A DNA stretch of 64,000 bases from positions 46,190,001 through 46,254,000 of the forward strand of contig NC_135655.1 of NCBI RefSeq assembly GCF_964188315.1, written 5' to 3'. A program made the position numbers and the translations under genes. A model generated the notes under the pieces. It did not search any database, had not been told where the DNA came from, and saw nothing but the letters and a program-made list of their open reading frames with translations. Within the stretch, counting starts at the first letter, position 1. Each line of letters begins with the position of its first letter. The DNA is from Podarcis muralis (taxonomy: Eukaryota). Positions 1 through 50,130 of the stretch are shown piece by piece.

Positions 1-1191
1 AGGTAGTCCATTCCACTTTTGAGTAGCTCTTTCTGTCATCTTTACATATTTTCTGATTTAAAGGATCAGTACATTTTAGACCACAGGCAAAACATGAAAA
101 TAACCCTTATACAACTCACATTTGCAGTCAATCTTAAGAGTATAGAGAAAATACATTTTTGCATTTCTTATTCTTATACTTTCCATATATTGTTTACCTC
201 ACTAGTTCTGAAAATGATGCGGTAATTGTATTGCGATCCATTTTCTTTTATTTCTTCAGGTTTTTCTCTTCTGATGCTGACAGCTACAGGACCAAGGTTC
301 TCATCTGCCCCAAAGTAGTTCCAGTGTTCTTGTGCATTTAAAAAAAGGGGTGCGGGAGGAGAAAAAATTATTTTCCATCTCAGAAAAAAAGGATTCTGTA
401 TGTTACATTTTGCATAGTAAGTAAAGGATTAAGGACAGTTTTGTTCTACATGTGAGCAAGTTCCAACCATCCATGGGCACATGCTCACATGGGCAAATGT
501 AGCATGCACATACAGCTGGGAAACAATTCTAAAGATTTTGGTGATACTCATTCTAACCGCTGTGATAACAGAAACTGCTACCAGTTGTAGCTATGAACAT
601 CTGGTTCACATGCTCAGTGTAATATTTGAATGTTGTAAAGCACAAAACCTTCTTCCAGGTATAGCAAACATTTTCCCAACCTACAGGCTGAGGTCCGTGT
701 TCTATATTAAAGGCACACCAGAATTATGTTAATTATACCCCCCTTTCTAGAACAGTAAGAAGAATTGTGTCAACTGGGGATTTGGAAAAACCTTTTAGTA
801 CAATGAAATACATTATAATAGAGAAACCTCCATTTGACCATTTTAATACATGTTTTACAATGCTGTGGGTGCCAGAACATTCGCACAGTCCCTGTTAAAC
901 AAGTTTTAATTACATTTCCATTTCCAAAATATTTTTAAAACCTCGGCATCTTTCTGTAGATTGTGCCTTTCGATTTGGTCTCGTTCCATGTACATGTTAG
1001 AAGACTGCCTAAACTATAAAGTCTAAAAAAATCCCTGTCATATTATTAAAAAGCAAATTGCAAAATTTAAGTGTTTGTATGAATTATGCCTAGAATGATC
1101 AAGGAACATTCTGTGCAGCAGGCAGTACTTGGAGAACATTTTGTAAAATAGGAAAGAATAATGCTATTCAAGGTATTAAATGATTGCTCAC

Positions 1192-2680
1192 CTTTCTGAT
1201 AGAAGAATTTACGATAATAATATGCACCAAGATCCACGTGTTCAACGATGTATCTCTTCCCTCTATCCAAGTGCAAGACCAGGTTTTCCTTGGGTACTTC
1301 AAGAACAGCCACTCCTGCATTTGTGCAATGAGAGCTAAGAGTGGACTCAAAAGAGGCACTTTCACAGCCACTGAAGGATCCAGAGTTAGATTTTGTGAGA
1401 CTGATCTTTCTTTCTCCTTCCCCACCAATCTCATTACGAAAATAAGGACAACTCATAACAAGGTCATTGCTTTTATCGTCTCCCTGGTCCATATTGAGAC
1501 TTCCTTTGGAATTCAGGTCTTCTGTACTGCCCATTGGGGAATTGAAACTTGCAGAATGGGACAATGGTCCAGAAGCTAATGATGCAACTGCTGCAGCAGA
1601 AGCTCCAGTCGTTGTATTCCTTCGTTTGATCACATTGTGCCGGTTAACTGCCACTTCATTTAAATCAAATAATATGCTCTGGCAATCGTAATGGGCAAAA
1701 CACTTTGGACAAGTCCAAGGCCTGACACTGTCTTCTGATCTGCTGTCCTCAAGATCTGAGGACTTCCCAAGATCCCCTTCAGCTTTGGCATTACGCAGCT
1801 TTCGAAAAATGGAAGAATCTCCTGTCTCTGATTTTGAACGCCTCTTCAGTGGCTTCTCCCTTTCTTTAAATAGTCGAAGGTTCTCCCTCTGAGTTATGGG
1901 TCCATCTATCACATCCAAGGAAAATCCTGAGCCCTTACTTCCACTAGCTATAAGGAGTTCACAGAATTTGCTGGTGCCTGGACCTCTCTGGTCAGATTTT
2001 TCATCTTTAAAACTTTTCAACAGGTCAAAAAAACCTTCCCCTGAAGTACCCTGCTTATCTATTGATGAAGTGCTGCCATATTCCCTGTGCAGTGATGGTC
2101 CAGATTTATAACTGGGCGAGATACATTCATCATAGCTATCTACATCAAGCTCACTTAGGGTAATGTCACTATTACTTCGCTGTCTTATTCTGCGAAGAGC
2201 TTTTCTTGGGGAGCTGTGGTATCCATCAGGAGTGAGAAACCTAGAATCTAGGTTCTCAGACTGCCTTGTTTTGCTCTTAAGTGTGTTTTGGATACTCTTT
2301 AACATGACAGAGTCACTAGAATTCAAGTTAATAGAGCTCCCCTGGCTCCCAGGACTGCTTTTTGAAGACATACTATCAAGGCAGCTTGATGTATCCATTT
2401 CTTGACTTGATCTACTATTTTCTTTGACATTTTCCTTCCTTGGGGGCCAGTCAGCAATCCTGGCCCTAACCCCCATTTTAGGTACTCCAGGAGTAGATGT
2501 AAGGTGATGAGACCCTTCATTGCGTGGAGGGCCTACTGGAGCCATCACTGAAGATCCCAAGCTACCATTCTGTGACCTGAAGCGTCTCATATAAAAGTCA
2601 TCTGAGTGGACTTTAGGAGTTCCATCTGACACTCCGGTGGCAACAGCCCTTTCAGTCTGGGACCGCTTCAAACTGGTCAT
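1192..2680 (-). CDS. SIPA1L1: First coding exon of signal-induced proliferation-associated 1-like protein 1 (N-terminal 496 codons, SPAR N-terminal region before the RapGAP domain); gene continues beyond the left edge
   Basis: Translation [10 protein letters not shown]...[35 protein letters not shown]...[20 protein letters not shown]...[16 protein letters not shown] matches recalled vertebrate SIPA1L1. The ORF track runs to 1067, but a canonical phase-1 donor (AAA G|GTGAGC) lies at 1192/1191; the last 41 aa of the track ORF are intron read-through. Confidence 0.95.
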
Positions 2681-3039
2681 TATTGGAAAACGTGTTTATC
2701 CTTAGTAAGCTCCAAAAGAAAACACAGCCATCTCTGCCTTTCACATTTATAACTCTCTTCCGAAGAAGGTTATCCAGAAAACACAAAGGTTGCATGAGAT
2801 CCCAGTTATGATCATGTAATATAATGGCAAATGTTCTACAGATGCAGCTTTTCTACACTTGATCTTAGCCAAAAGGCCGAGAAGCGATAGCTTTTCTACG
2901 AACGACCGTTGTTCAATCACTTTTGACTTCTTAGAAGTCTTAATCCGTCCATTTCAAAAAGTAGTCATCCTTCCATACGTCAAAAAATAATAATCTTCGT
3001 TTGAAGAATGAACTTTCAACTGGTAAACTTGCTTTAATC
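2681..3039 (-). other. SIPA1L1: 5'UTR portion of the SIPA1L1 first coding exon (exon 1192-3039, 1848 nt)
   Basis: Minus strand reads ctttctcttctttatttgctctag|GATTAAAG: polypyrimidine tract plus AG acceptor at 3041/3040. Size is consistent with the ~1.8-kb first coding exon recalled for mammals. Confidence 0.75.
2853..2888 (-). pseudogene. RNU2: Tailless U2 snRNA retro-fragment (U2 nt 1-36) flanked by an 11-bp direct repeat
   Basis: Reverse complement of 2853-2888 is ATCGCTTCTCGGCCTTTTGGCTAAGATCAAGTGTAG, the U2 snRNA 5' end. AGCTTTTCTAC occurs at 2846-2856 and 2889-2899. Confidence 0.95.
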
Positions 3040-5744
3040 CTAGAGCAAATAAAGAAGAGAAAGTGATTAGCCAGCACATTCACAGTTATATACAGCAGAA
3101 AAGTGAAAGCTTCAATACAGTAGTTGCTTTCTCAGTACATTTCACCACAAAGATCAGCGATTGATACCTAACATACTGTATTTTACAGCTTTGAATGCAG
3201 AATGATGTAAGTTACTTTTCAATATATACAACAGACTTCTCTCTAGATCAACAAGCTATAGGAAAGCTATTACCATCTATACATATGTAGAAAGAACAGA
3301 TGTGCTTCTCAATTAGGAGATACTGAGTTGGATCCAAACTGCTGTTCTGCCAGTGGAAAGCACTTTTGGTTCTGTACTGTGGGACTCTCCACCCCCTATT
3401 TTTGGCAATTGCTCCTTTTCCCTTCTCATGTCACTCTGTTCCAGAGAGTCCTCCAACCCTCAATAGAAGATTGGGGGGGGGGGGGGGACACAGGAGACTG
3501 CAGAGGAAAGGAGGAAGCATGAAAGCTCCATTTTGTAAACATTTATGGAATGGGACTTACTTAGGATTCAAGCCATTCTTAGCAGATTGCCTATTGATTA
3601 CATGTATGCTTTAGGAAGACCAGGTGTAAATTTTGAGTTTTTGCATGGAGTAGTCAGGATTGATTTTGACTGCTGAACCAGGCTGCTACTGCTGGTTACT
3701 ATCCCAAGGACAGACCTGAGAAGCAATTCCTTTTCATCTATTTATTAGTTACTATCATTATCATGGCTATTATTATTATTCACTGCTTGGTTTTCTACTC
3801 AAAATTCAGAAGACACCTTAAAAAAGACGTATCTTGAAGCTCAGCAGTAGCAGCAAAGTGAAATGAAAGTCAGTTACAATATTTCAGGAAAAAGCTCTTC
3901 ATAAATTGCATGAAAGCAGTTTTTGAAATGTAAATGACCACCCAAGACTGGGATCAAAATGTGTGAGGGCTTAACCCTCCTCTGATCACAGCCCCAAAGA
4001 AAATGTCCCTCCTCCCCAAACAAAAGAAAAGCTAAAAATACCTTGAGTGATATATATTTTTTTTTGGGGGGGGGGGTAACAGTGGATAGGAAGAGTTGAA
4101 GAGTTAATCCCCCCCCCATGAGCATGGACCTGATCCTGTTCACTTGGCTCACCTTGTGGCAGCTATCTACATTTCAAAAACTGCACATCAATTATTTTCA
4201 CACAATTAATGTAGCAAAGCTGATGTGACTACCGAGAAGATGTTGCTGCAAATCACCAATCTCACTTCCAAAACTAGGACCAACTCTGGGTTTTGTGAAG
4301 CCCTTGGCACGATGATTTGGGTAGGCTCTCCTCTCCAGTGACACCTGTCTTTGGTGCCTGCGGCATTGGGTCATTTGCCTCCCTGCTGGCTGTTCTTTCA
4401 CTCACCAAGAGGGTGAAGAAATGAATAGGTAGTGGAGAGAGGCAGCAGCAGTTTGTGAGGGCTCTTTGTGAGTGGCTCCTCCTGATGTGCTGGGGTTGCA
4501 ACTACCATTAAAAGATTCCGACCCCTGGCTGAAAATGAGACAACACAAGGCAGATATTCCTCTGCCAAGCTCAGAGAATAAGAAAAAGGAAGGGCCAAGT
4601 CATTTCCCACTCTCCTGACCAGTGTCCCTATGTGGAGCTGACTAATCAGGAGGTGGGATACCCTGGGGGAATAGTGTGCTGGGTAAGATGCCCCCCCAAG
4701 CAGGCTATGTGCCCTGCCCTGGCAGTGCCAATCTCGTTAGAGATGGCTTAGATCGCCCCTTTCCCCCAGATCATCAAAAAGAGATCCCTACTTGAAAGCA
4801 GGAGCCACAATTACTAGGTCCATAAAATTCTGAAAGAAACCAGAGTAGGGGAATAAAAGAAGGGTGAACACTGAGTAAGTTCCTGGAGTTTGCTTCTGAG
4901 CAAATTTCAAAGGTGGCCAATGAAGGCCCAAGTCAACCTTCTGGACGATGACTAGGAAGTCTTCCCAGAGCATTTCTCCTTGTAAACCTTGGCATAGGTT
5001 AGTGTTCAGAGATGACTCAAGACATTTTGCTGACGGCAGAATATCCAAATGTCACCTTCATTGTGCCAAATATATAATAATAATCTGATAGTTAACAGTA
5101 GACTTCCAAATGAGGCTTGCTCAGCCTATTACAAAGCTGGTCTTACTAGCTTCATGTTCCCAAACTTATTTTCCTCTCTCATCCCTTCTACCCACCATCC
5201 CAAATCTTCTTCTCATCCCCAAATTGGAACTCTGTTTGCATAAGCAAGCTCTTACTGCTAATGGCTGGCAGTGCAAGAATCGTCACAGAGAAGTTTTAAG
5301 CTGGAGCCATAGAGCAGACCCCTGATAACTGCCAGGCTGGATACAGCCTGCCAACCATTTATTGCTGCTCCCCTGTTTCTGCTATTCTAAGCAAACAAAA
5401 GTAGTTTTCTAAGACCTTAGTAGCCCACAATACATGGTTAGTGGGCTGTATCTGGCGTGATGGTTCACAAATTATCCAAGTCATCAATGTGCTTAACACA
5501 TTTGCTTAGCACCAGTGGGACTCCAAACAGCCAAGTGGTACTCTGGTGTGAGAAAAAGTATTGCTCAGAACAATTTATCGCAGCATTTCCCCCACGAGCG
5601 GCTATAAAAATACAAATGGAGTTTTGCATGTGCAACTGAGTTTTCAACTTCCTTTCTAGCACAGCCCCTTGCACCTTCTGAAAAATGGCTTCTGAAGGTC
5701 AAGGAACCTTCTGGAACAGCATGGGATGCAGTTCTGGGACCATA

Positions 5745-5825
5745 GTAAAGGTAAAGGTACCCCTGCCCGTCAGGGCCAGTTGTGACCGACTCTAGGGTTG
5801 CGCGCTCATCTCGCTCAAGAGGCCG
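5745..5825 (-). mobile_element. Sauria SINE (Squam1) 3' fragment, 5'-truncated
   Basis: (ACCTTT)n tail (gtaaaggtaaaggtacccctg) plus the BovB-derived 3' region; TSD GGGACCATA at 5736-5744 and 5826-5834. Confidence 0.85.
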
Positions 5826-7069
5826 GGGACCATAACTCGGGTGAAAAATCAGGTTCCACAGAAGTGTTTTCTGGCCCAAAGCCCTCGATTATGAAAGCTG
5901 TCCAAATAAAACGCAAAAAGCAAATGAAAACATTTTGAAGCATTTCCGCAATATTTTTACCTGAAGGTTCACAAAACAGAAAATACAAATACTCAAACCC
6001 TCCCTGCCCCAAACTAGTGATTCAATACACGAACGAATTTTTTTCTACACTCATCTTGCATATTAAAATACAAATGTTTTATCTTCTGTCAAAATAAAGC
6101 ACCTTTTAAATTCTAATTTTATAAGGTTACTGAAACAAAAGGCACTTCCTACATTGACTCTGGACTGATTACAAAGTGGTAGTTTGTCTTTTAAAGCATC
6201 TTTAACAGGAACAACAACAAAAGCCACCTCCACAAATGCACCCTGGCAGGGAGTAGACAAAGGCAAGAGAATGTCAGCATAAAATCCTGCACTGCTGTAT
6301 ACACCCTTTAACACAAAGAAGAGAATCCTATTCAGAGACTCAACCAATTACACAAAATGTGGCCTTCAAATACTTGCCAAGTCTATGCATGCAAGGATGC
6401 TGCTGAACCAGCACCACGTTGACAGAGAAGCATTGTGTACAAATCAAGGCTTCTGACAGTTCTAGGGAAACCAGCACTTTCTGCAGCCTCTTCTCAAAAG
6501 TAACAAGTGCTTGCTACCACAGTAATTAAACCTCTAGCCAGAACATAGCCTGCCTCCAACAACTAGCAAATTTAAAAGCATTTCATGGAATGCAGTATCT
6601 GGAAGAGGGCATGGCTGTCAAAAAGGAACAGTCAACGGAAGCACCCTAGGCTGCAACGTTTTGTTGCAGGCCTCCCTTATTCATGTTTAAAACTGCGATA
6701 AAATGCGCCACAGGTTTGCTGCAATATTCACACGCTTGCCTTGCAATTTTCTATTATCCATTATTAAAAGAATAATAGAGCTTATATGTCTAAGTTAACA
6801 ATCACCATGCTTTATCTGCTAAGGCAACACAATGGCTAGACTGTTAATTAAACAAGCCATTCCAAACAATCCATGTTTAAGACGTCTTTCATAAACCAAT
6901 TGCTATTTTAAAATCTATAATTAAGGTTTTAAAAACACACAGGGTGAGAAGCAATGCAGTGCAAATGGGAGTTTGCTTGTGCAATGGGGCTTCTCCTTCC
7001 TTTCGTCCCCCTTTATGCCTTCTGAACATCCCCAAAAACTGCCCTGGAGTGTCTATGGACACCCTAGAG

Positions 7070-7379
7070 CACAGGTGGGCAACCTAAGGCCCATGGGCCA
7101 CAAGCGTTTAACCAGCCCATGGACCCCCACCGCCCGCTTGGTTGGCTCTTGTGTGTCGTGTTAAACCGGCGTGGAGCAGAGCGGGGACCGCCTTCTGCAA
7201 TGCTGGTCGGCTTCCCATTGGCTGCAGGAAGCTCCTGCAGCCAATGGGAAGCTGCACACACCTCCTTTGTGCAGGAAAAAGAGCCAGAAATAGCATTTAC
7301 GCACACAAACACTCTGGCCCACCGCTGTATCTGCAGGACCGTAGACCGGCCCAAGCCACAAAAACTTTGCCGACCCCTG
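7070..7379. mobile_element. hAT-Charlie-type MITE with internal 20-bp-arm palindrome, nested in an older MITE
   Basis: Ends cacaggtgggcaacc...tttgccgacccctg; 8-bp TSD CCCTAGAG (7062-7069) / CTCTAGAG (7380-7387), close to the Charlie NTCTAGAN preference. Confidence 0.8.
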
Positions 7380-7618
7380 CTCTAGAGCATATTTTGGTGG
7401 CACAAAGGGGATGAAGGGGGGGCAGAGAGAAACCAGAAGTCCCACTGTGCAGACAGATTTTTGTTCCACAAGGAGACTGACATCTCACAATCAGTAAAGG
7501 CCACATTAAGTGTCTTCATAATCATCTAACCTTTTAAAAAGAACATTCCTTTCATAGATTTAAATATCTGAATTACTACAGTTGGCAATAATTATGATGT
7601 GAGGCTATACTCATCAAA

Positions 7619-7968
7619 GGGAAGTGGGTGGCACTGTGGGTTAAACCACAGAGCCTAGGGCTTGCCGATCAGAAGGTCGGCGATTCGAATCCCCGCAACA
7701 GGGTGAGCTCCTGTTGCTCGGTCCCTGCTCCTGCCAACCTAGCAGTTCGAAAGCACGTCAAAGTGCAAGTAGATAAATAGGTACCACTCCGGCGGGAAGG
7801 TAAACGCTGTTTCCGTGTGCTGCTCTGGTTCACCAGAAGCGGCTTAGTCATGCTGGCCACATGACCCAGAAGCTGTACGCCAGCTCCCTCGGCCAGTAAA
7901 GCGAGATGAGCACCGCAACCCCAGAGTCGTCCGCGACTGGACCTAATGGTCAGGGGTCCCTTTACCCT
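7619..7968 (+). mobile_element. Full-length Sauria SINE
   Basis: tRNA-like head (gggtggcactgtgggttaaaccacagagcc...gattcgaatcc), central core, ccctttacc tail; imperfect TSD tatactcatcaa / tatattcatcaa. Confidence 0.93.
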
Positions 7969-8054
7969 TATATTCATCAAGGGAAGGGGGAGAATCACAA
8001 CTTCTTCAGAAAAGTTTTTATTTTGAATTGCGTATTTAAATAGCTGGGGTGCCT

Positions 8055-8193
8055 NNNNNNNNNNNNNNNNNNNNNNNNNNNNNNNNNNNNNNNNNNNNNN
8101 NNNNNNNNNNNNNNNNNNNNNNNNNNNNNNNNNNNNNNNNNNNNNNNNNNNNNNNNNNNNNNNNNNNNNNNNNNNNNNNNNNNNNNNNNNNNN
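8055..8193. other. Assembly gap (139 N)
   Basis: Run of N bases. Confidence 1.
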
Positions 8194-8644
8194 TAACTGT
8201 TCCTTCCTTGGCTTCAAGTGATCACAACTCACTGTAAAAACACAATTGCTCAGAAAAATAAAAAGGAAAAAAATACAGTATTTTATGTTTAATATAATTC
8301 AATGACAAGGTATAATTTCTGCATGCCAAACATAATCTGTAAAGTAAATATTTGGTATTTAAAAACAAGTAAAATAAGAGGGGGGGGAGTTAGTCATCTG
8401 GGGTCTATTCAATGTGGTTTTTTTATAAGCCTGTTACTCGGAATAAATCCAGCTGTCTGGTGCTAACTTCTAGAGAGAACTCTGCATGCTCTGTGCTGTG
8501 TCACACGTAAAGCTGACTGGAAATACAAAATATTTGCGAAAACAAATCTAGCTCTTGTCTTAATGTCAGCTGTGCTCTCCAGCTTGACTACAATTTATCA
8601 GTGATTGTCAAAGAAGAAACATGTTGAGCATTGAGCCAGATTCA

Positions 8645-23364: not shown

Positions 23365-25001
23365 ATAAGCATGTGCCATAAAGCATCTTATATGCAGCTG
23401 AAGAGGATACAATATTTACATTCCCGCCTTCAGATACGATTTGAAGAAAATGTTTAGAAGTCATAACTTAATTGAAAGTAATTGGAAATAGTTACCCAGA
23501 GACACAGTTAAAGATGATGTAGTGTAGTCTAGCTATAAAAGGGAGGAATTGCCCATGTTCTCCCAGCTTGGGGAACTATGGTCTGTTTAAACTAGGGGAT
23601 GGAAACAAACCGGAATCTGAAAACATGGTTTGCTCTTGTTGGTTGTCAAACACAACACAGGTTAAACAAGCCACAATTCCTGAAGTTTGATCACCACGGG
23701 AAACTATGATCTCAGGCAGTGACCATTTTGCACACGTCCAATTGATGTGTGGGTCCTTTTGGACGTGGTAGAAGGCTGAATGGGGCGGAACAGGCTTATG
23801 CGCACTCCACCCCATGCAAAGTGGGTGCCACCTGTAACATAAAATCAAAAGCAGAAGCTTTTGACAGAAAAGAAGAAAAAAGAAGCATATAAGCCCAAGC
23901 ATTATGCAAACTGGTGTAGTGTACTAGGGTTCTATCCAAAGTACTACTTTGGATTTATACTTGTGCACCCGGAACTGGTCTGTGACCGTAATAATAAAAT
24001 AAAATTCAATTCAATACTTGTGCAAAAGGACTTTCCCCATCTCCTCCCCTAAACCTCTTCTAGTGGTTCCCCCAAATGTCCAGAGAAGCTCTGGGGCTGG
24101 ATGGGGAAATCCTTGTGCTGACAGGACGTGTTTGTTGTATACTGTCCCAAATCACAAATTCATGAACTCTCAGGACATCTTAGGTAAATCATCCTAATTG
24201 ACAATATGGGGATAATACGAGCTGTTGTGAGGCTTACTGAGATAACGTGTGAATAACTATTTGAAAACTTGAAATGGGCTATATAAATATTTATTGTTAT
24301 ATTAAGTATTCCATTTACACAAGCACTGCCACTGGAAGATTCTTTGGAACAGTACAAAAAAAAACCCATGAAGGTGACTTTGTACTAAGCTGAGAAGCTT
24401 CAAGGGGGGGGGGGGGGATCTCTAGTTGCTGTGTCAGCATGGCATAATCAGCTATTAGATATCCCTCAGCGATACTGCTTGATGCTATCACACAGCAGCA
24501 GTTCCTTTCAACTCCTTTTAAAGGAATTAACAGAGCACTGCATTACCTATGTTTGTCTAATATCTCAATGACCCAGACAACATTTTACTTTGCTGAAATC
24601 AGAGAGTCTCCCTGCTTCTTTCAGTCTTACTCATCTCCGCATTTACTCACTATGCCAGCCACCAACAGATTCAAAACTAAGCTTAGCATAGGACGTTAAT
24701 GTATTGGCCAAACACACCACATCAGACCAAGCTTGGAATTTCTAAAGACCTTTTCTGAGATCGACTTTTTGGGTCGTACCCAGGCTCAGTAATGCTTATT
24801 GTTCAGCAGCGGCAGCCAATGTGGTGGCTGTGAGTGCAGTGGCCCTTGAGGTCTTCCTATTGGTCCCAAAGAAAGCTCTGAGTTCCCTACACACTGCCTT
24901 TGGTCATGAGGTGATGAGAATAGTTACTTCTTTTTCCTCTTGAAAAGTACACACTGTTAAAGGAGGAAGTTGGAAGGGTGAAAATCTCCCACTTAACTAT
25001 A

Positions 25002-25227
25002 CAGTGGTACCTCGGGTTAAGTACTTAATTCGTTCCAGAGGTCCGTACTTAACCTGAAACTGTTCTTAACCTGAAGCACCACTTTAGCTAATGGGGCCTC
25101 CTGGTGCCGCCACGCCGCCGGAGCATGATTTCTGTTCTCATCCTGAAGCAAAGTTCTTAACCTGAAGCACTATTTCTGGGTTAGCGGAGTCTGTAACCTG
25201 AAGTGTATGTAACCCGAGGTACCACTG
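25002..25227 (-). mobile_element. Tigger-type MITE, same family as 20738-20979, opposite orientation
   Basis: CAGTGGTACCTCGGGTTAA ... TAACCCGAGGTACCACTG with TA TSD; interior is the reverse complement of the 20738 copy. Confidence 0.9.
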
Positions 25228-25950
25228 TATGCTTTTCAAGGCTCAAATTAAATCTACCGGATTTGATTTTTACTTAGATCCCTTGGAAAAACAAATATTG
25301 TGTATATGTGTGCTTTTTCTCTATCTTTCTCTGGCTGATCCAGGTTAGGGGGTGTGGATAGAAGTGGTTGTGCATGATTTAGTACCCAAGGCACTAAAGC
25401 AAAAAACCCCCAAATGTGTCCATGGGTCTAAAACATTCTGTTTTCAGCTTCTCAAATTCAAATGAGTCAGCTTAAAAGTTTGAGCCTAGGCGAAACTTTA
25501 CACATGCACCTCAACCTAAAGTTTACCTAATCTTAGGCTATGGAACAAAAGCATCTGAACTGGAACCTAGACTGTGGCTTCATCTTTTCCATTTATGTCA
25601 GCATGAGGGCACAGCCACAAAAAAATGGTAAAGGTGCATAAAACAGAATCCTGCTGGCTAAAACCATGTGGTAGTTTCTCCTTTTGAAAGATATTTATTT
25701 TTAAAGTACCGTATTTTTCGCACCATAGGGCGCACCGGACCATAGGGCGCACCCAGTTTTTAGGGGGGGAAATCAAGAAAAAAATCTTTCCCCCCCCCCC
25801 AGACCCAAAGAGCAGCGTACAGGGTGCGCACAACCTCTCCCTGCTGGAGGGGTTGCGAGCAGCTATGGAGCAAGCCAAGTTTTGGCTTCCCCTTTAGCCC
25901 CATGCAGCCTCTCCTTGCCGGGAGACGCTGCACAGGGCTAAAGAAGCCAT

Positions 25951-27400
25951 AGCCCCATGCAGCCTCTCCTTGCGGAGGGGTTGCGCGCGGCTATGGAAGA
26001 AGGCAAGGCAGCGAGCGGGATGGATCCCGCTCGCTGTTTTGCCTTCCCCTTTAGCCCCGCGCAGCCTCTCCTTGCGGAGGGGTTGCGCGCGGCTATGGAA
26101 GAAGGCAAGGCAGCGAGCGGGATGGATCCCGCTCGCTGTTTTGCCTTCCCCTTTAGCCCCGCGCAGCCTCTCCTTGCGGAGGGGTTGCGCGCGGCTATGG
26201 AAGAAGGCAAGGCAGCGAGCGGGATGGATCCCGCTCGCTGCCTTGCCTTCCCCTTTAGCCCCGCGCAGCCTCTCCTTGCGGAGGGGTTACGCGCGGCTAT
26301 GGAAGAAGGCAAGGCAGCGAGCGGGATGGATCCCGCTCGCTGCCTTGCCTTCCCCTTTAGCCCCGCGCAGCCTCTCCTTGCGGAGGGGTTGCGCGCGGCT
26401 ATGGAAGAAGGCAAGGCAGCGAGCGGGATGGATCCCGCTCGCTGCCTTGCCTTCCCCTTTAGCCCCGCGCAGCCTCTCCTTGCGGAGGGGTTGCGCGCGG
26501 CTATGGAAGAAGGCAAGGCAGCGAGCGGGATGGATCCCGCTCGCTGCCTTGCCTTCCCCTTTAGCCCCGCGCAGCCTCTCCTTGCGGAGGGGTTACGCGC
26601 GGCTATGGAAGAAGGCAAGGCAGCGAGCGGGATGGATCCCGCTCGCTGCCTTGCCTTCCCCTTTAGCCCCGCGCAGCCTCTCCTTGCGGAGGGGTTACGC
26701 GCGGCTATGGAAGAAGGCAAGGCAGCGAGCGGGATGGATCCCGCTCGCTGCCTTGCCTTCCCCTTTAGCCCCGCGCAGCCTCTCCTTGCGGAGGGGTTGC
26801 GCGCGGCTATGGAAGAAGGCAAGGCAGCGAGCGGGATGGATCCCGCTCGCTGTTTTGCCTTCTCCTTAAGCCCCGCGCAGCCTCTCCTTGCGGAGGGGTT
26901 GCGCGCGGCTATGGAAGAAGGCAAGGCAGCGAGCGGGATCCATCCCGCTCGCTGCCTTGCCTTCCCCTTTAGCCCCGCGCAGCCTCTCCTTGCGGAGGGG
27001 TTGCGCGCGGCTATGGAAGAAGGCAAGGCAGCGAGCGGGATGGATCCCGCTCGCTGCCTTGCCTTCCCCTTTAGCCCCGCGCAGCCTCTCCTTGCGGAGG
27101 GGTTGCGCGCGGCTATGGAAGAAGGCAAGGCAGCGAGCGGGATCCATCCTGCTCGCTGTTTTGCCTTCCCCTTTAGCCCCGCGCAGCCTCTCCTTGCGGA
27201 GGGGTTGCGCGCGGCTATGGAAGAAGGCAAGGCAGCGAGCGGGATGGATCCCGCTCGCTGTTTTGCCTTCTCCTTTAGCCCCGCGCAGCCTCTCCTTGCG
27301 GAGGGGTTGCGCGCGGCTATGGAAGAAGGCAAGGCAGCGAGCGGGATGGATCCCGCTCGCTGTTTTGCCTTCCCCTTTAGCCCCGCGCAGCCTCTCCTTG
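25951..27400. repeat. Minisatellite, 14 copies of a 102-bp GC/CpG-rich unit, each containing a 23-bp-arm palindrome
   Basis: Unit ...GAAGGCAAGGCAGCGAGCGGGAT-GG-ATCCCGCTCGCTGCCTTGCCTTC...; 34-aa periodicity repeated 14 times in the ORF track (25957-27495). Confidence 0.97.
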
Positions 27401-27420
27401 CCGGGAGATGCTGCGCAGGG

Positions 27421-27720
27421 CTTTCCTGGCTTTTCTGGGAGGTGGGGGAATTCCCCCACCTCCCGCAAAACCGGCAGAAGCCGCGCGCACTTTAAAAGGG
27501 CTGCACGGCTTCTTCTGGCTTTCCTGGGAGGTGGGGGGATTCCCTCACCTCTCGCAAAAGCCCGCAGAAGCCGTGAGCTCTTTAAAGGGGCTGCGCGGCT
27601 TCTCCTGGCTTTTCTGGGAGGTGGGGGAATTCCCCCACCTCCCGCAAAACCGGCAGAAGCCGCGTGCACTTTAAAAGGGCTGCACGGCTTCTCCTGGCTT
27701 TCCTGGGAGGTGGGAGAAGG
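27421..27720. repeat. Second minisatellite, ~3.3 copies of a ~90-bp unit containing a 28-bp perfect palindrome
   Basis: GGGAGGTGGGGGAATTCCCCCACCTCCC at 27437-27464 and 27616-27643; degenerate copy near 27526-27553. Confidence 0.9.
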
Positions 27721-30700
27721 GACTGATGCGGCCAGTCAGTCCCTTCTCCCTCCTGTGGAAAAGCCCGCAAGAGCGCACGGAGCTTGTGTGCGGCTCTTGG
27801 GGGCTTTTCCCGCCTGCCTCCCCCCCTGCATTCGCTCCATAGGACGCACACACATTTTCCCTTGCTTTTTAGGAGGGAAAAAGTGCGTCCTATGGTGCGA
27901 AAAATACGGTAATCCAATTACTATACATCACTTGAGTTTAGTCATTTTGTGATATTGCAGCAGAACCTCCCTCCTGTCCATATAATTTAGTTCATTATGG
28001 AATGTTATTATACTTGTTGGCTTTGCACATCGCATTTTCATTCTAACGTACAACTTAATCCCACCAAATCAATTTGCTGAAAAGGGGGATTTGAAAAACT
28101 TCGAGGCAACAAATTAAACATTTTAAATTTGTTTTTCTCATGCTGATTTGAACCAGGAATAATACTTTTTTTAAAAAAAAATTACAAAACATATCATACA
28201 AGAACAAAAGAAGTGCCAAACTAACACCACCCAATGGTCACTGGTATGAGGCTTAGACACACACAAAAAGAAATGCACAAAGAAGAAGAAAAGTTAGCCT
28301 TGCTTTCAGCTATGTTTGTTTTGCTGTAAACACAGTACAGCAGTGAGAAACGAAGCATATGGCAAAACAGTATCCCATTGCCAGCCTAATTTCACATAAG
28401 ATAAAGCAAAAACCAGTAAGCAACCAAACTGACCTCCAAAAAATTAAAATTCATTATACAGAAATTATTATTGTGTCAATCTCTATTTATTCAGGATAAA
28501 ATGAAGAAGCAGTCTGCAAAGATCTCTGAGGTGATTTTTTACCTTTACTGAGGACCAAAATTACTATCTAAAGGCACCCAATTATATAGACTGCATGAAG
28601 TCATGATCAGGTATCATTAATTATGAAAAGGCCTCAAGATCTTTCACTAATACACATGATGATAGAGGAAAGAACAAGGGATCATCTCTAAATCTTACAT
28701 CTTCAAAAGAGGAATACACTCTACCACAGTTGGCCCTCATTTAGCAAAACTTTTTTTAAAAAAAACACCTTTGATTTCCAATTGCAGCATTCTGAGATTA
28801 TACACCTGTCTTTTTTTTGAACCAGATAAACTCGCAAAGAGATTTCCTTTTGATTGCAACAACAAATACGCTTCACTACCCCACCCCCAACCTGTCAACC
28901 CTCTGGTTAAAAACTTGTCGTGCAACTGAATGTCAAAATGCAGTAAGCCTGCATGCAGCAATGCCTTCATGTTTCATGGCGTATTAAAAATACGCTGTTG
29001 AGCATCAAATAAGCATTTGCTGTGCAAGTGTTCCCTTTGCACCTCGCTTTGAAGGTTCAAAGAAAGCTATTACGGCCTACTTCTCTAAAACATTACACAC
29101 CGCAGTAAACACTGAAAGTTAAAAGGATAGATAAAAGAGATTCAGATGGCAGCTTTTCTTTAAAAAAAAAATGTAGTACTGAACATAGATGTAGAAATAA
29201 GAGATTTGTTACCATAGAAATATCAGATAAACTCTGATAACTGTTTGGCAATTATTATATATATATTCTTTGGCAATTATTATTGTTCCAGAAGAGTGCT
29301 ACTACATTGTTTCACAGCAGTGCAATTGTCATGCAGCTCACTGCCAACTGCAGCATTCTGCTGTGTGTGAATGGTGTTACTTTAATCATCCTCAGCATCT
29401 CACAATACTAACATTTGGGCTTAAAAAACCCCGATAATTAAAATGAGAACAACGTTCCTATGTTGTCAATGGTATATTGGAGAAAAAGGACTAGTACAAG
29501 TGGTATGTGGGCATGTAATGGCTGATGCAGACAAAGATTCATACCCAGCAATGTTTCCCTTCTGCTACCAGCAATAAACTGTTCCCCTGCTAGAAACAAA
29601 GGGATCAGCTCCCCATGCAATCGTACCCACTGGGGAAGAAAAAGTGCTTCTTGCTTTTATAGGAACTTGTCCCAGTATACTTGTTACTAGTAAACGTACT
29701 TCTGCGTCTACTCCCGAACATGGCTTCAGAGAACTTCTCTTTCATTTTCTCTTTGCAGTTAGAAAAGCCCATCCATAATATTTTCTCCTTTGGGACCTAC
29801 CAATTCTACACAATTAAATGTGCATCACTGTATCTACCCTTAGGATTTCAATGCAGGTTTGAGCAGGTAATAGGAATGAGCGCATTTTACATAAGTTGTG
29901 TCAAACAGGGTTGTACTGAAAGATTACTGGGTTGTTGCTATTTTTAGTTCAATGCCTGCTTTCCAGAAACAAGACAAATGTCAGTAAATTCCTCCAGATT
30001 TCAGCACCTCTGATTGGCACCAAGCTTTTGCATTTCTGTGCTTCAGGGTGCACTACTGATTCAGTCATAACATACAGTATAAAGTTGAAAAGCAAGCAAG
30101 GAAGCACCTATTTTCTGCAAGCTAGAATTTCCAGCCACACTTACAATGAACTAGGTCCAGCTAATTTCATCAGGGCTACCTTCCAAGTAGGTGTGATCAC
30201 ACCACAGCCCAAGACAATTAGTTCTCTGTTTTGCTCAAAGAATGCATAAATGAACAGCCGAACAGCGGTTGGAATAAATTCTAACAAGCTCATGTCCATG
30301 ATATTATTCTGCAGATTAATAGCCAGCTGGGCTGTACTGAAAGCCCAGATGGTTATTAATCTACAGGAAATGTCCAGCAGCCAGCTTAGTGCTATTTTAA
30401 GATGTACAGAAAATGTTTAGATACCATATGCTTCGTTTCCAGCTGCATCCAACGTTCCTGAAGTTGATGAGTATATATTAAATACGATGAGCGTATTTAG
30501 AGACTCGTCAGGTTCTCCCTTTGGCTTACCGGTTACTTTAAGAACATCTGAAAAGGCAAGTGATGTCTAGGAGGGAAGGGCTAGATTTGCAATAGTAAAA
30601 ACTTGTGGCCCAGATTTAAATAACCAAGCGTGCCAGCAGAAGGGCTTCTACTAGCACAGTGGGGCCTTCCTCTCCTCTTCTCCTGCCGATGTCTCCCAAA

Positions 30701-48924: not shown

Positions 48925-49235
48925 ACGTATTTTTCGCTTTATAAGACGCACCCGACCATAAAACGCACCTAGTTTTTAGAGGAGGAAAACAAGAAACAAG
49001 AAAGCAACACAAAGCCTCCTGAGCGAAGAGGGAGGAGTGCTCCGGCTGCACTCAAGAGGCTTTGTGTGGCTATCGCTGAAGCCAGAAGAACAAGAGGGAT
49101 CACTGCGCACCGATCCCTCTTGCTGTTCTGGCTTCTGGGATAGCTGCGCAGCCTGCATTCGCTCCATAAGACGCACACACATTTCCCCTTACTTTTTAGG
49201 AGGGGGAAGTGCGTCTTATAGAGTGAAAAATAAGG
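48925..49235. mobile_element. Short (311 bp) member of the same Tc2-like family as 25709-27909
   Basis: acgtatttttcgctttataagacgcacc ... gtgcgtcttatagagtgaaaaataagg; TA flanks; shares the subterminal block gcattcgctccata(a/g)gacgcacacacattt..ccctt.ctttttaggaggg. Confidence 0.85.
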
Positions 49236-49237
49236 TA

Positions 49238-49952
49238 GTTGTTGGATGGTGGCAGGACTAGACCATAACAGCTGGGAAACTCAGGAGCGTTCCTAGACTA
49301 CATCAACAGCTAGAGCATGTGGACAGGCTAGAACATGGTACTGTATGCCTACATCAAACATATGCAAAAGGTAGCAAATGTAGAGGAAAGAGAACAGTTT
49401 GAAGTAGAGAGCTGATCTTGCAATAAGAATGCATAGTAACTGACAGCTTCCTTCACAGTAAATGAAAACAAAACTGATCTGTTCCATTTGCTGGAGGAGC
49501 ATATTGCATCCATTAAAAAAGCAAACAAGTGTACAGTAGTTTGCGGGAGTCCAAATACTATGCTCACCCGGCAGAAAGGACAAAAGTTCACACAAGGAAG
49601 CTGACACGTCTAATGATGTTGCATCCATCTAATGCAGCACGTACTGGGCACCAAATGTTCATGGTCAGATGGGACTGTGTCCAACTTCCAACACATTCCA
49701 GTGACTAAAGCAAAGACAAATGCCACAGGTACACTGCAGCATATAAAACGGCAACCAGTTTGGGCTCAAGGGAATCATAGGTATTAACTATGTTTCATGT
49801 GTTCACTGGCTGTGATGTGACCATATTCTTTGCCAAGAATAGCAAAAAGTCAGCTTGGGACACATGGAACAAATTTATCGATGTCACAGGTGCATTTCTG
49901 ATATTGGCATAAGCCCCAGCACTATCCCTGGCAATTTCATGGTGCTAGTTAA

Positions 49953-49987
<35 letters not shown>

Positions 49988-50130
49988 GATGATGATGATG
50001 ATTTATTTGTACCCCGCCCATCTGGCTGGGTTTCCCCAGCCACTCTGTTGAAAACTTTGCAGCGCCTCTGTATGACAGAATCAGTAGATTGTGTAAAGTC
50101 AATGAGAACAGGCAGCAGCTGTTTTCAAAG
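49238..50130 (+). pseudogene. Fossil XPG/FEN1-like (PIN-fold, H3TH) nuclease coding region of an AcademX-like DNA transposon, interrupted at 49951-50046
   Basis: Ordered frameshifted motifs: LLDG (49239-49250), FLDYI/QLEHVDRL, NENKTDLFHLL (49461-49493), HKEADT (49591-49608), MFHVFTGCD..FFAKNSKKSAWDTW (from 49790), ENF..LYDR..VNENRQQLFSK (50050-50130). This matches a recalled TE-borne XPG-like protein consensus. Confidence 0.65.
49951..50046 (-). mobile_element. L2-type 3' tail fragment with (TAAA)n/(GAT)n simple-repeat tail, inserted in the nuclease fossil
   Basis: Minus strand cagagtggctggggaaacccagccagatgggcggggtacaaataaat; same tail as at 31620 and 59175. Confidence 0.75.

What the first reader, a model, noticed from the sequence alone, without database searches (positions are those of the whole stretch)
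25709..27909. A Tc2-type MITE that has become a carrier and amplifier of a palindromic CpG-rich minisatellite
Seen: intact 27-bp TIRs and TA TSD enclose 14 nearly identical 102-bp units. Each unit has a 23-bp-arm, 2-nt-loop palindrome (perfect in copies 3-8 and 11) plus a second imperfect hairpin (GCGCAGCCTCTCC-TTGC-GGAGGGGTTGCGC). There are about 10 CpG per unit with almost no CpG decay, unlike the AT-rich CpG-poor surroundings. Inference: a still-mobilisable element carries a 1.4-kb cruciform-prone array that behaves as an ectopic CpG island and VNTR inside the SIPA1L1 locus. It could seed satellite DNA, fragile sites or an alternative promoter. I do not recall such a palindrome-array cargo described for this family.
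Basis: partly seen in the sequence, partly recalled or inferred. Interest (0 to 1): 0.8.

Follow-up and report, generated by a model that had tools for sequence, protein, structure and literature searches.

The report
Hairpin-repeat array inside a common lizard transposon
A 2.2-kb cut-and-paste transposon upstream of the SIPA1L1 coding exons carries 14 tandem copies of a 102-base double-hairpin unit, but both the transposon and the unit occur hundreds to thousands of times in this lizard genome, so this is a young, probably polymorphic copy of a known kind of repeat-breeding transposon and no special regulatory device.

Summary
The element spans 25709-27909 and has 27-bp TIRs (26/27), TA on both sides and a 102-bp x14.2 array. 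Each unit folds into two hairpins. CpG o/e is 0.87 in the array and 0.31 in the flanks.

Contig word depth puts the TIR at about 10^4 times the single-copy flank and the 102-bp unit at about 10^3 times, in two species. A short 311-bp family copy with other hairpins lies in the same window. At least 20 unchecked notes of this scan describe similar Tc2-like hairpin-array elements elsewhere in this genome.

The array most likely grew by slippage or unequal exchange between a 24-nt direct repeat, the shared left arm of two hairpins. High CpG reflects youth or homogenisation: the older 61-nt repeats bracketing the array differ at 5 sites, 4 of them CpG transitions.

One individual appears to carry the empty site, so the insertion is recent. 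RNA data give no sign of promoter activity.

Arrays inside MITEs that seed satellites are already described (Xenopus miDNA4 and Xstir, bivalve pearl, Drosophila Tetris). This is a new member of a known kind.

The parts
25707..25708 (.). Left TA target-site duplication
   Evidence: Read directly. The matching TA is at 27910-27911.
25709..25735 (+). Left 27-bp terminal inverted repeat
   Evidence: 26/27 match to the right TIR, and 0 matches in 100 shuffles. Word depth is about 12,000 times the flank in run X1.
25740..25752 (+). Second direct copy of the inner 13-nt TIR motif; putative extra transposase-binding site (inferred)
   Evidence: Read. The same motif occurs inverted at 27837-27849 and recurs near the end of the metagenome contig L001.
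25822..25949 (+). Degenerate proto-units: an older two-hairpin module followed by hairpin X'
   Evidence: The module order is the same as in the 102-bp unit, the central palindrome is shorter, and several CpGs have decayed.
25950..27401 (+). Array of 14.2 copies of the 102-bp double-hairpin unit
27378..27423 (+). Hairpin X, which shares its first 24 nt with each unit and closes the array
   Evidence: The 61-nt stretches 25879-25939 and 27362-27422 are 92% identical direct repeats.
27415..27718 (+). Second tandem array, 89 bp x3.4; each unit is a long hairpin
   Evidence: 87% matches; -27 kcal/mol, z = -5.7.
27694..27768 (+). Single long hairpin
   Evidence: -25.3 kcal/mol, z = -6.7.
27826..27882 (+). 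Right subterminal region; holds an inverted copy of the TIR motif that forms a hairpin with the right TIR
   Evidence: z = -7.1. Conserved at 87% in the short family copy.
27883..27909 (-). Right 27-bp terminal inverted repeat
27910..27911 (.). Right TA target-site duplication
48925..49235 (+). Second, short (311-bp), older copy of the same family: TA-flanked, same ends, two different internal hairpins

Best explanation
This is a recent, probably still polymorphic insertion of a non-autonomous TA-targeting TIR transposon. It belongs to the Tc1/mariner superfamily; the Tc2/pogo subgroup is likely but unverified. Its family has thousands of copies in a wall-lizard genome, and family interiors are chains of GC-rich hairpins. 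In this copy's subfamily, one module of two hairpins (102 bp) is bracketed by a direct repeat, because the next hairpin starts with the same 24 nt. Replication slippage or unequal exchange between those repeats duplicated the module, and further rounds expanded it to 14 copies here. The family average appears to be only a few copies per element. The array is CpG-rich because it is young and homogenised, not because it is protected from methylation. It lies about 23 kb upstream of the first SIPA1L1 coding exon, on the gene's upstream side, and has no demonstrated effect on that gene. Shown: the anatomy, the multicopy status, the second copy in the window, and CpG decay in the older parts. Inferred: the slippage mechanism, the empty site in run X16, and expansion at this locus versus before insertion.
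For: The array starts and ends with the same 24-nt hairpin arm and is bracketed by 61-nt direct repeats that are 92% identical. A degenerate proto-unit with the same module order lies just to the left. Word depth in X1 is about 50 in the flank, 608,861 in the TIR bin, 18,000-48,000 over 25782-25949 and 37,000-130,000 in the unit bins; X16 and the second species' run X39 show the same pattern. The ratio of unit depth to border depth is about 1.3-3.8. X16 contig record 15 (2,246 nt, at flank depth 8.53) aligns to 25208-25708, stops exactly at the TA/TIR border, and runs on for 1,749 nt that lie off the laid stretch. X16 record 16, at single-copy depth, spans the array's left border with 3 differences, which indicates a sister copy elsewhere. 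The short family copy in the window has the same ends and a different hairpin interior. Four of the 5 differences between the bracketing repeats are CpG transitions. The interior's 31-mers are held by a second species' DNA run at share 0.66 and by a third species' RNA runs at 0.16-0.17. The literature describes MITEs giving rise to internal arrays and satellites (PMC9659126; PMC4079207).
Against: Summed contig word depth is only a rough proxy for copy number; the tool says so itself. The right flank was not in the laid stretch, so the empty site in X16 is inferred from where the alignment stops. No other full copy carrying this array was seen end to end, so 'the unit lies only inside these shells' is compatible with the data but not shown. 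The exact count of 14 could not be checked against long reads. The Tc2 assignment rests on recall. No autonomous partner was examined.
Confidence: 0.75

Rival explanations
1. The 14-unit array was already present in the master copy and arrived by transposition. The element is then a true carrier of a long array, and the array did not expand at this locus.
For: The left border of the array is itself multicopy, at about 360-700 times the flank. Exact-match RNA contigs cover 25902-26075 while the flank has zero RNA depth. Both suggest sister copies with an identical border.
Against: The ratio of unit depth to border depth is only about 1.3-3.8, so most copies hold few units. The variant pattern has the perfect-palindrome variant in central units and the TT variant at the edges, which fits ongoing local turnover.
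Confidence: 0.3
2. One reading: the array acts as an ectopic unmethylated CpG island, alternative promoter or fragile site in the SIPA1L1 locus.
For: The sequence meets CpG-island criteria (GC 64-66%, o/e 0.79-0.87, more than 2 kb). RNA runs from three studies hold 0.49-0.58 of the interior words. The palindromes are very stable, and the loop flips in copies 10 and 12 suggest hairpin-mediated events in vivo.
Against: Four of 5 differences between the older bracketing repeats are CpG transitions, which points to methylation-type decay. The RNA/DNA depth ratio is lowest for the unit (about 0.0001-0.003), against 0.009 for the TIR and 0.03 for the neighbouring SINE-like repeat. The flank next to the element has zero RNA depth in X25. 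With hundreds of sister copies, RNA contigs cannot be assigned to this locus.
Confidence: 0.07
3. The number of units, or the array itself, is an assembly artefact.
For: Near-identical 102-bp repeats are hard to assemble, and short-read contigs cannot confirm the count.
Against: The units carry an ordered, non-random pattern of variants with no indels, and the array has clean, distinct borders. Unit k-mers are abundant in independent runs.
Confidence: 0.08
4. The hairpin modules serve the transposon, for example as hairpin-RNA or small-RNA sources that tune silencing, or as structures that aid excision or repair. They would then be selected features and not repair debris.
For: Hairpin interiors recur in both family copies in the window despite unrelated interior sequences, and many unchecked scan notes report the same. 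The interior is present in RNA libraries.
Against: No Rfam family reaches its gathering score; the matches are only generic hairpin look-alikes. Interiors are not conserved between copies. No small-RNA data were examined.
Confidence: 0.1

Closest known systems
miDNA4, a Tc1-mariner MITE of Xenopus tropicalis with a satellite motif inside it (Scalvenzi and Pollet 2014, as summarised in PMC9659126)
   Same: Both are non-autonomous Tc1/mariner-type elements in which a tandem repeat is born inside the element, and transposition together with local expansion spreads and amplifies the unit.
   Different: Here the unit is a 102-bp CpG-rich double palindrome. Long satellite arrays outside the element have not been shown. 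The host is a lizard, and the element is 2.2 kb, which is not miniature.
Xmix MITE / Xstir tandem repeats of Xenopus laevis (Hikosaka and Kawahara 2004, cited in PMC9659126)
   Same: Lineage-specific tandem repeats ride on a TIR element.
   Different: The sequences are unrelated. In that case the repeat derives from the TIR region, whereas here it derives from internal hairpin modules.
Tetris foldback transposon of Drosophila virilis (PMC4079207)
   Same: A non-autonomous DNA transposon whose internal tandem repeats provide building blocks for a satellite, with a secondary-structure-rich architecture.
   Different: In Tetris the arrays form part of long TIRs. Here the TIRs are short (27 bp) and the array is central.
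pearl/CvA-type MITE-like elements of bivalves with core tandem repeats (PMC9659126 table; PMC8268682)
   Same: A constant shell surrounds a variable number of internal tandem units, and these are linked to satellite families.
   Different: They belong to a different superfamily, and their units are not palindromic or CpG-rich.

Membership tests
Non-autonomous Tc1/mariner-superfamily TIR element | TA target-site duplication | tested here: met
   TA at 25707-8 and 27910-1. The short copy also has TA at 48923-4 and 49236-7.
Non-autonomous Tc1/mariner-superfamily TIR element | Terminal inverted repeats | tested here: met
   27 bp, 26/27 matching, with no chance matches in shuffles.
Non-autonomous Tc1/mariner-superfamily TIR element | No transposase coding capacity | tested here: met
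   The only long ORFs are periodic read-throughs of the 34-codon unit on both strands. Their Pfam hits are spurious, with no separately significant stretch.
Non-autonomous Tc1/mariner-superfamily TIR element | Multicopy, dispersed | tested here: met
   TIR word depth is about 10^4 times the flank in three DNA runs. A second copy lies in the window.
MITE in the strict sense | Miniature size (below about 800 bp) | tested here: not met
   This copy is 2,201 bp. The 311-bp copy at 48925-49235 does meet the criterion.
Tc2/pogo group | TIR matches a Tc2-group reference element, and the autonomous partner encodes a pogo-type DDE transposase | not testable with these tools
   No TE library was available. 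Literature searches for the TIR string gave nothing relevant. The one outside match, L001, breaks off 113 bp into the element. An unchecked scan note reports an autonomous pogo element elsewhere on this chromosome.
TE-borne tandem repeat / satellite seed (miDNA4-, Xstir- or pearl-like) | Tandem array lies between the TIRs and derives from the element's own sequence | tested here: met
   Proto-unit and bracketing repeats.
TE-borne tandem repeat / satellite seed (miDNA4-, Xstir- or pearl-like) | Unit also forms long arrays outside the element (a true satellite) | tested here: inconclusive
   Unit depth is about 10^3 times the flank, but the unit-to-border ratio of about 1-4 is compatible with all units lying inside shells. 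The genome was not searchable.
Functional CpG island | Sequence criteria (GC above 55%, o/e above 0.65, at least 500 bp) | tested here: met
   GC 0.64-0.66 and o/e 0.79-0.87.
Functional CpG island | Germline hypomethylation and promoter activity | tested here: inconclusive
   Indirect evidence points against it: CpG-transition bias in the older parts and low RNA representation. No methylation or 5'-end data were available.
Foldback (FB-like) element | Long TIRs built of tandem repeats | tested here: not met
   The TIRs are 27 bp. The array is one direct array that is 79% self-complementary only because each unit is palindromic.

The most novel reading that the evidence does not exclude
This abundant lizard transposon family systematically generates GC-rich palindromic minisatellites. 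Snap-back or template-switch repair creates hairpins whose shared arms then act as direct repeats for slippage. Hairpin extrusion in vivo perfects the palindromes (the TT to CC change that removes two mismatches in central units) and flips their loops (copies 10 and 12). Transposition then scatters the arrays, making the family a main source of new CpG-rich satellites and VNTRs across lacertid genomes.
Probability: 0.2. Interest if true: 0.6.

Novelty: new member of a known kind. Interest (0 to 1): 0.35.

Why it matters
The locus itself is ordinary: a young transposon copy with an expanded internal repeat and no evidence of an effect on SIPA1L1. The family is of moderate interest to repeat biologists. 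It has thousands of copies, appears recently active, is shared by at least two species, and has a constant shell around diverse hairpin arrays. That makes it a convenient natural system for studying how minisatellites and satellites are born inside DNA transposons, and how palindromes behave in a vertebrate germline. For genome annotation, these elements will produce false CpG islands, false long ORFs (512 aa here) and false miRNA-like hairpins.

Tried and rejected
Rfam in E-value mode returned 146 sub-threshold hits, all generic miRNA-hairpin look-alikes and none near its gathering score. The element is not a known RNA gene.

Long ORFs across the array (up to 512 aa on both strands) were rejected as coding. 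They come from a stop-free 34-codon period, and their Pfam hits are artefacts.

TIR pattern scans found nothing in bacterial/archaeal genomes or viral contigs. The metagenome scan gave one contig that ends 113 bp into a related element, so no autonomous copy or transposase was obtained and the Tc2 label stays untested.

Paper searches for the TIR string, for TcMar-Tc2 with lizard, and for Podarcis with MITE found no description of this family.

I first read 3 of 4 singleton variants in the array as CpG transitions. I dropped that argument because the two in unit 1 are shared with the neighbouring hairpin X' and so are not independent. The bracketing-repeat comparison replaced it.

I did not lay reads on the whole element, because the tool turns away stretches with a long repeat. 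The right junction, the 89-bp array and a direct empty-site joint were therefore not examined.

I ran no further search on the array ORF. Short-read contigs of such repeats are about 100 nt and would give no flanking context.

ARAGORN found no tRNA-like part in the neighbouring hyper-abundant repeat.
Full report
OBSERVATION

The element runs from 25709 to 27909. Its 27-bp ends are inverted repeats matching at 26/27. The first 21 nt occur exactly twice in the window and never in 100 shuffles. TA flanks both ends.

Tandem Repeats Finder reports a 102-bp period with 14.2 copies, 97% matches and no indels at 25950-27401.

In register, the 14 full units differ from their consensus at 26 of 1428 letters and keep 137 of 140 CpGs. 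Each unit folds as single-stranded DNA into two hairpins, at -50.6 kcal/mol with z = -9.6. One has a 19-bp stem over unit positions 1-44. The other is the 23-bp-arm, 2-nt-loop palindrome over positions 50-97. Because both halves are palindromic, the whole array is 79% self-complementary.

GC is 66% and CpG o/e 0.87 in the array, against 40% and 0.31 in the flanks.

The inner 13 nt of the TIR recur as a direct copy at 25740-25752 and as an inverted copy at 27837-27849. This resembles the multiple binding-site ends of many Tc1/mariner elements, but that reading is an inference.

Just left of the array, 25822-25949 holds a degenerate older module with the same order of parts. It contains a version of hairpin A, a short version of the palindrome lacking the central ~28 nt, and then a hairpin X'.

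The array itself ends in a hairpin X (27378-27423) whose first 24 nt are identical to the start of every unit. As a result, 61-nt direct repeats at 25879-25939 and 27362-27422 bracket the array at 92% identity.

The remaining interior consists of the 89-bp units and two more stem-loops, and it also folds into strong hairpins (z = -5.7 to -7.1).

The long ORFs over the array (up to 512 aa on both strands) arise from a stop-free 34-codon period. Their Pfam hits are spurious. Rfam gives only sub-threshold miRNA-hairpin look-alikes.

IS IT A FAMILY, AND IS THE UNIT UNIQUE TO THIS LOCUS?

A second copy lies in the window at 48925-49235. It is 311 bp and TA-flanked. Its ~75-bp left end and ~85-bp right end are 81-87% identical to those of the large copy. 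Its interior consists of two different hairpins.

I laid contigs of public runs on 24900-26155. The single-copy flank has word depth of about 50 in X1 and about 9 in X16. The other regions compare as follows:

- TIR bin: 608,861 in X1 (about 12,000 times the flank) and 104,554 in X16.
- Subfamily-specific left interior, 25782-25949: 18,000-48,000 in X1 (360-950 times).
- Unit bins: 37,000-130,000 in X1 (740-2,600 times) and 3,000-8,600 in X16 (340-950 times).

The 14 copies at this locus would account for only 14 times the flank.

A run of a second species (X39) shows still higher values. Earlier, that run held 66% of the interior's 31-mers, and RNA runs of a third species held 16-17%.

Summed contig depth is only a rough proxy, as the tool itself warns, but the orders of magnitude are clear. 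The shell has thousands of copies. This interior, unit included, has hundreds of copies or more.

The ratio of unit depth to array-border depth is about 1.3-3.8. This suggests that most elements carry only a few units and that 14 is an expanded state.

At least 20 unchecked notes of this scan describe 'Tc2-like shells filled with hairpin minisatellites' elsewhere in this genome, with units of 60, 119 and 140 bp. The scan has therefore found this kind of element before on other DNA.

One earlier follow-up note identifies the genome as a wall lizard. I did not verify that.

AGE AND MOBILITY

In run X16, a 2,246-nt contig at exactly flank depth (8.53) aligns to 25208-25708. The alignment stops at the last base before the TIR, and the contig continues for 1,749 nt that do not lie on the laid stretch (table 8, record 15).

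A contig entering a repeat with about 10^4 copies would break there, and a filled site would align past 25708. I therefore infer an empty site in that individual. Its flank differs from the window by about 2%. The right flank was not in the laid stretch, so this remains an inference.

A single-copy-depth contig in the same run spans the array's left border with 3 differences. This indicates a sister copy elsewhere in that genome (record 16).

WHY CpG-RICH?

The two 61-nt bracketing repeats are not subject to array homogenisation. They differ at 5 positions, and 4 are CpG transitions, with losses in either copy. The proto-unit also shows CG-to-CA/TG changes.

The element therefore does undergo methylation-type CpG decay. 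The near-intact CpGs of the array are best explained by recent expansion from one CpG-rich unit and by homogenisation.

In RNA run X25 the unique flank has zero depth. The RNA/DNA depth ratio falls from 0.03 for the neighbouring SINE-like repeat to 0.009 for the TIR and to 0.0001-0.003 for the unit.

Exact-match RNA contigs do cover 25902-26075. With hundreds of sister copies, they cannot be assigned to this locus. There is no support for a promoter role.

MECHANISM

The most likely mechanism, at about 0.75, has two steps. Hairpins A and X share a 24-nt left arm and lay 102 bp apart. Slippage or unequal exchange between these direct repeats duplicated the intervening module, and further rounds expanded it.

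The variant map fits this. The TT variant, which puts two mismatches into the palindrome, sits in edge units 1, 2, 13 and 14, and also in units 9 and 12. The perfect-palindrome CC variant fills central units 3-8, 10 and 11. Units 10 and 12 have the 2-nt loop inverted from GG to CC, which confirms the separate note s1-179072. These features suggest turnover in the centre of the array and hairpin-mediated events, but that is an inference.

Whether the expansion happened at this site or in a master copy before insertion is open. I give about 0.3 to the latter.

LOCATION

The ORF at 1067-2680 on the minus strand begins with the N-terminal sequence I recall for SIPA1L1 (the identification rests on my own knowledge). 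The element therefore lies about 23 kb upstream of the first coding exon, in a 5'UTR intron or an upstream region.

COMPARISON WITH WHAT IS KNOWN

Reviews list MITEs that gave rise to internal tandem repeats and satellites:

- miDNA4, a Tc1-mariner MITE with the satellite inside it, in Xenopus tropicalis
- Xmix/Xstir in X. laevis
- pearl/CvA in bivalves
- (GTCY)n-bearing MITEs in Lepidoptera

These are listed in PMC9659126. The foldback transposon Tetris supplied a satellite in Drosophila virilis (PMC4079207).

I found no paper describing this lizard family.

The Tc2 label could not be tested. The only outside match to the TIR is a metagenome contig that carries a 26/27 TIR after a TA and further copies of the inner motif, but it ends 113 bp into the element. 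Scans of prokaryotic genomes and viral contigs found nothing.

VERDICT

The feature is real and accurately observed. It is a new member of a known kind, a transposon-borne tandem array. It is not a unique cargo or a regulatory element.

The palindromic, CpG-rich nature of the units and the size and youth of the family give it moderate interest at family level.

Noticed in passing
window 24999-25230: A 232-bp repeat just left of the element has word depth of about 10^7 against about 50 for the flank, roughly 2x10^5 copies, in three DNA runs of two species. It is well represented in RNA. It is presumably a SINE, though ARAGORN finds no tRNA-like part. Some contigs join its end directly to the TA in front of the transposon TIR, so at other loci the two repeats abut.
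   Followed up: partly
window 26940-26941 and 27144-27145 (units 10 and 12): The 2-nt loop of the 23-bp-arm palindrome reads CC instead of GG, meaning the palindrome is inverted in place. This is a footprint of hairpin- or cruciform-mediated template switching or recombination. It confirms the separate scan note s1-179072.
   Followed up: partly
window 25950-27401, unit positions 88-89: The TT variant, which mismatches the palindrome, occupies the edge units (1, 2, 13, 14) and also units 9 and 12. The CC variant, which makes the palindrome perfect, occupies central units 3-8, 10 and 11. This may reflect mismatch correction within extruded hairpins, or simply spread of one variant.
   Followed up: no
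L001 6288-6403 (metagenome contig JGI24158J21664_10029587): An environmental contig (GC 38%, CpG o/e 0.86, apparently from another eukaryote) ends in TA followed by a TIR that matches the lizard element at 26/27, plus further copies of the inner motif in both orientations. The TIR type is therefore widespread and strongly conserved. The source organism was not identified.
   Followed up: partly
window 1067-2680 (minus strand): An open frame starts with the SIPA1L1 N-terminal sequence, so this is the first coding exon and the gene lies on the minus strand. The frame runs past the likely splice donor into the intron near its end.
   Followed up: partly
window 48925-49235 next to 49238-50130: The short family copy directly abuts the stretch that another scan note (s1-179081) calls a fossil nuclease gene of a large DNA transposon. 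The short copy may have inserted into or beside that older element.
   Followed up: no
window 25957-27495 and other frames: Because 102 = 34 x 3 and the unit has no stop codon in several frames, the array yields ORFs of 267-512 aa on both strands, with a spurious Pfam hit above its cutoff (TetR_C_11). This is a trap for automatic gene callers.
   Followed up: yes
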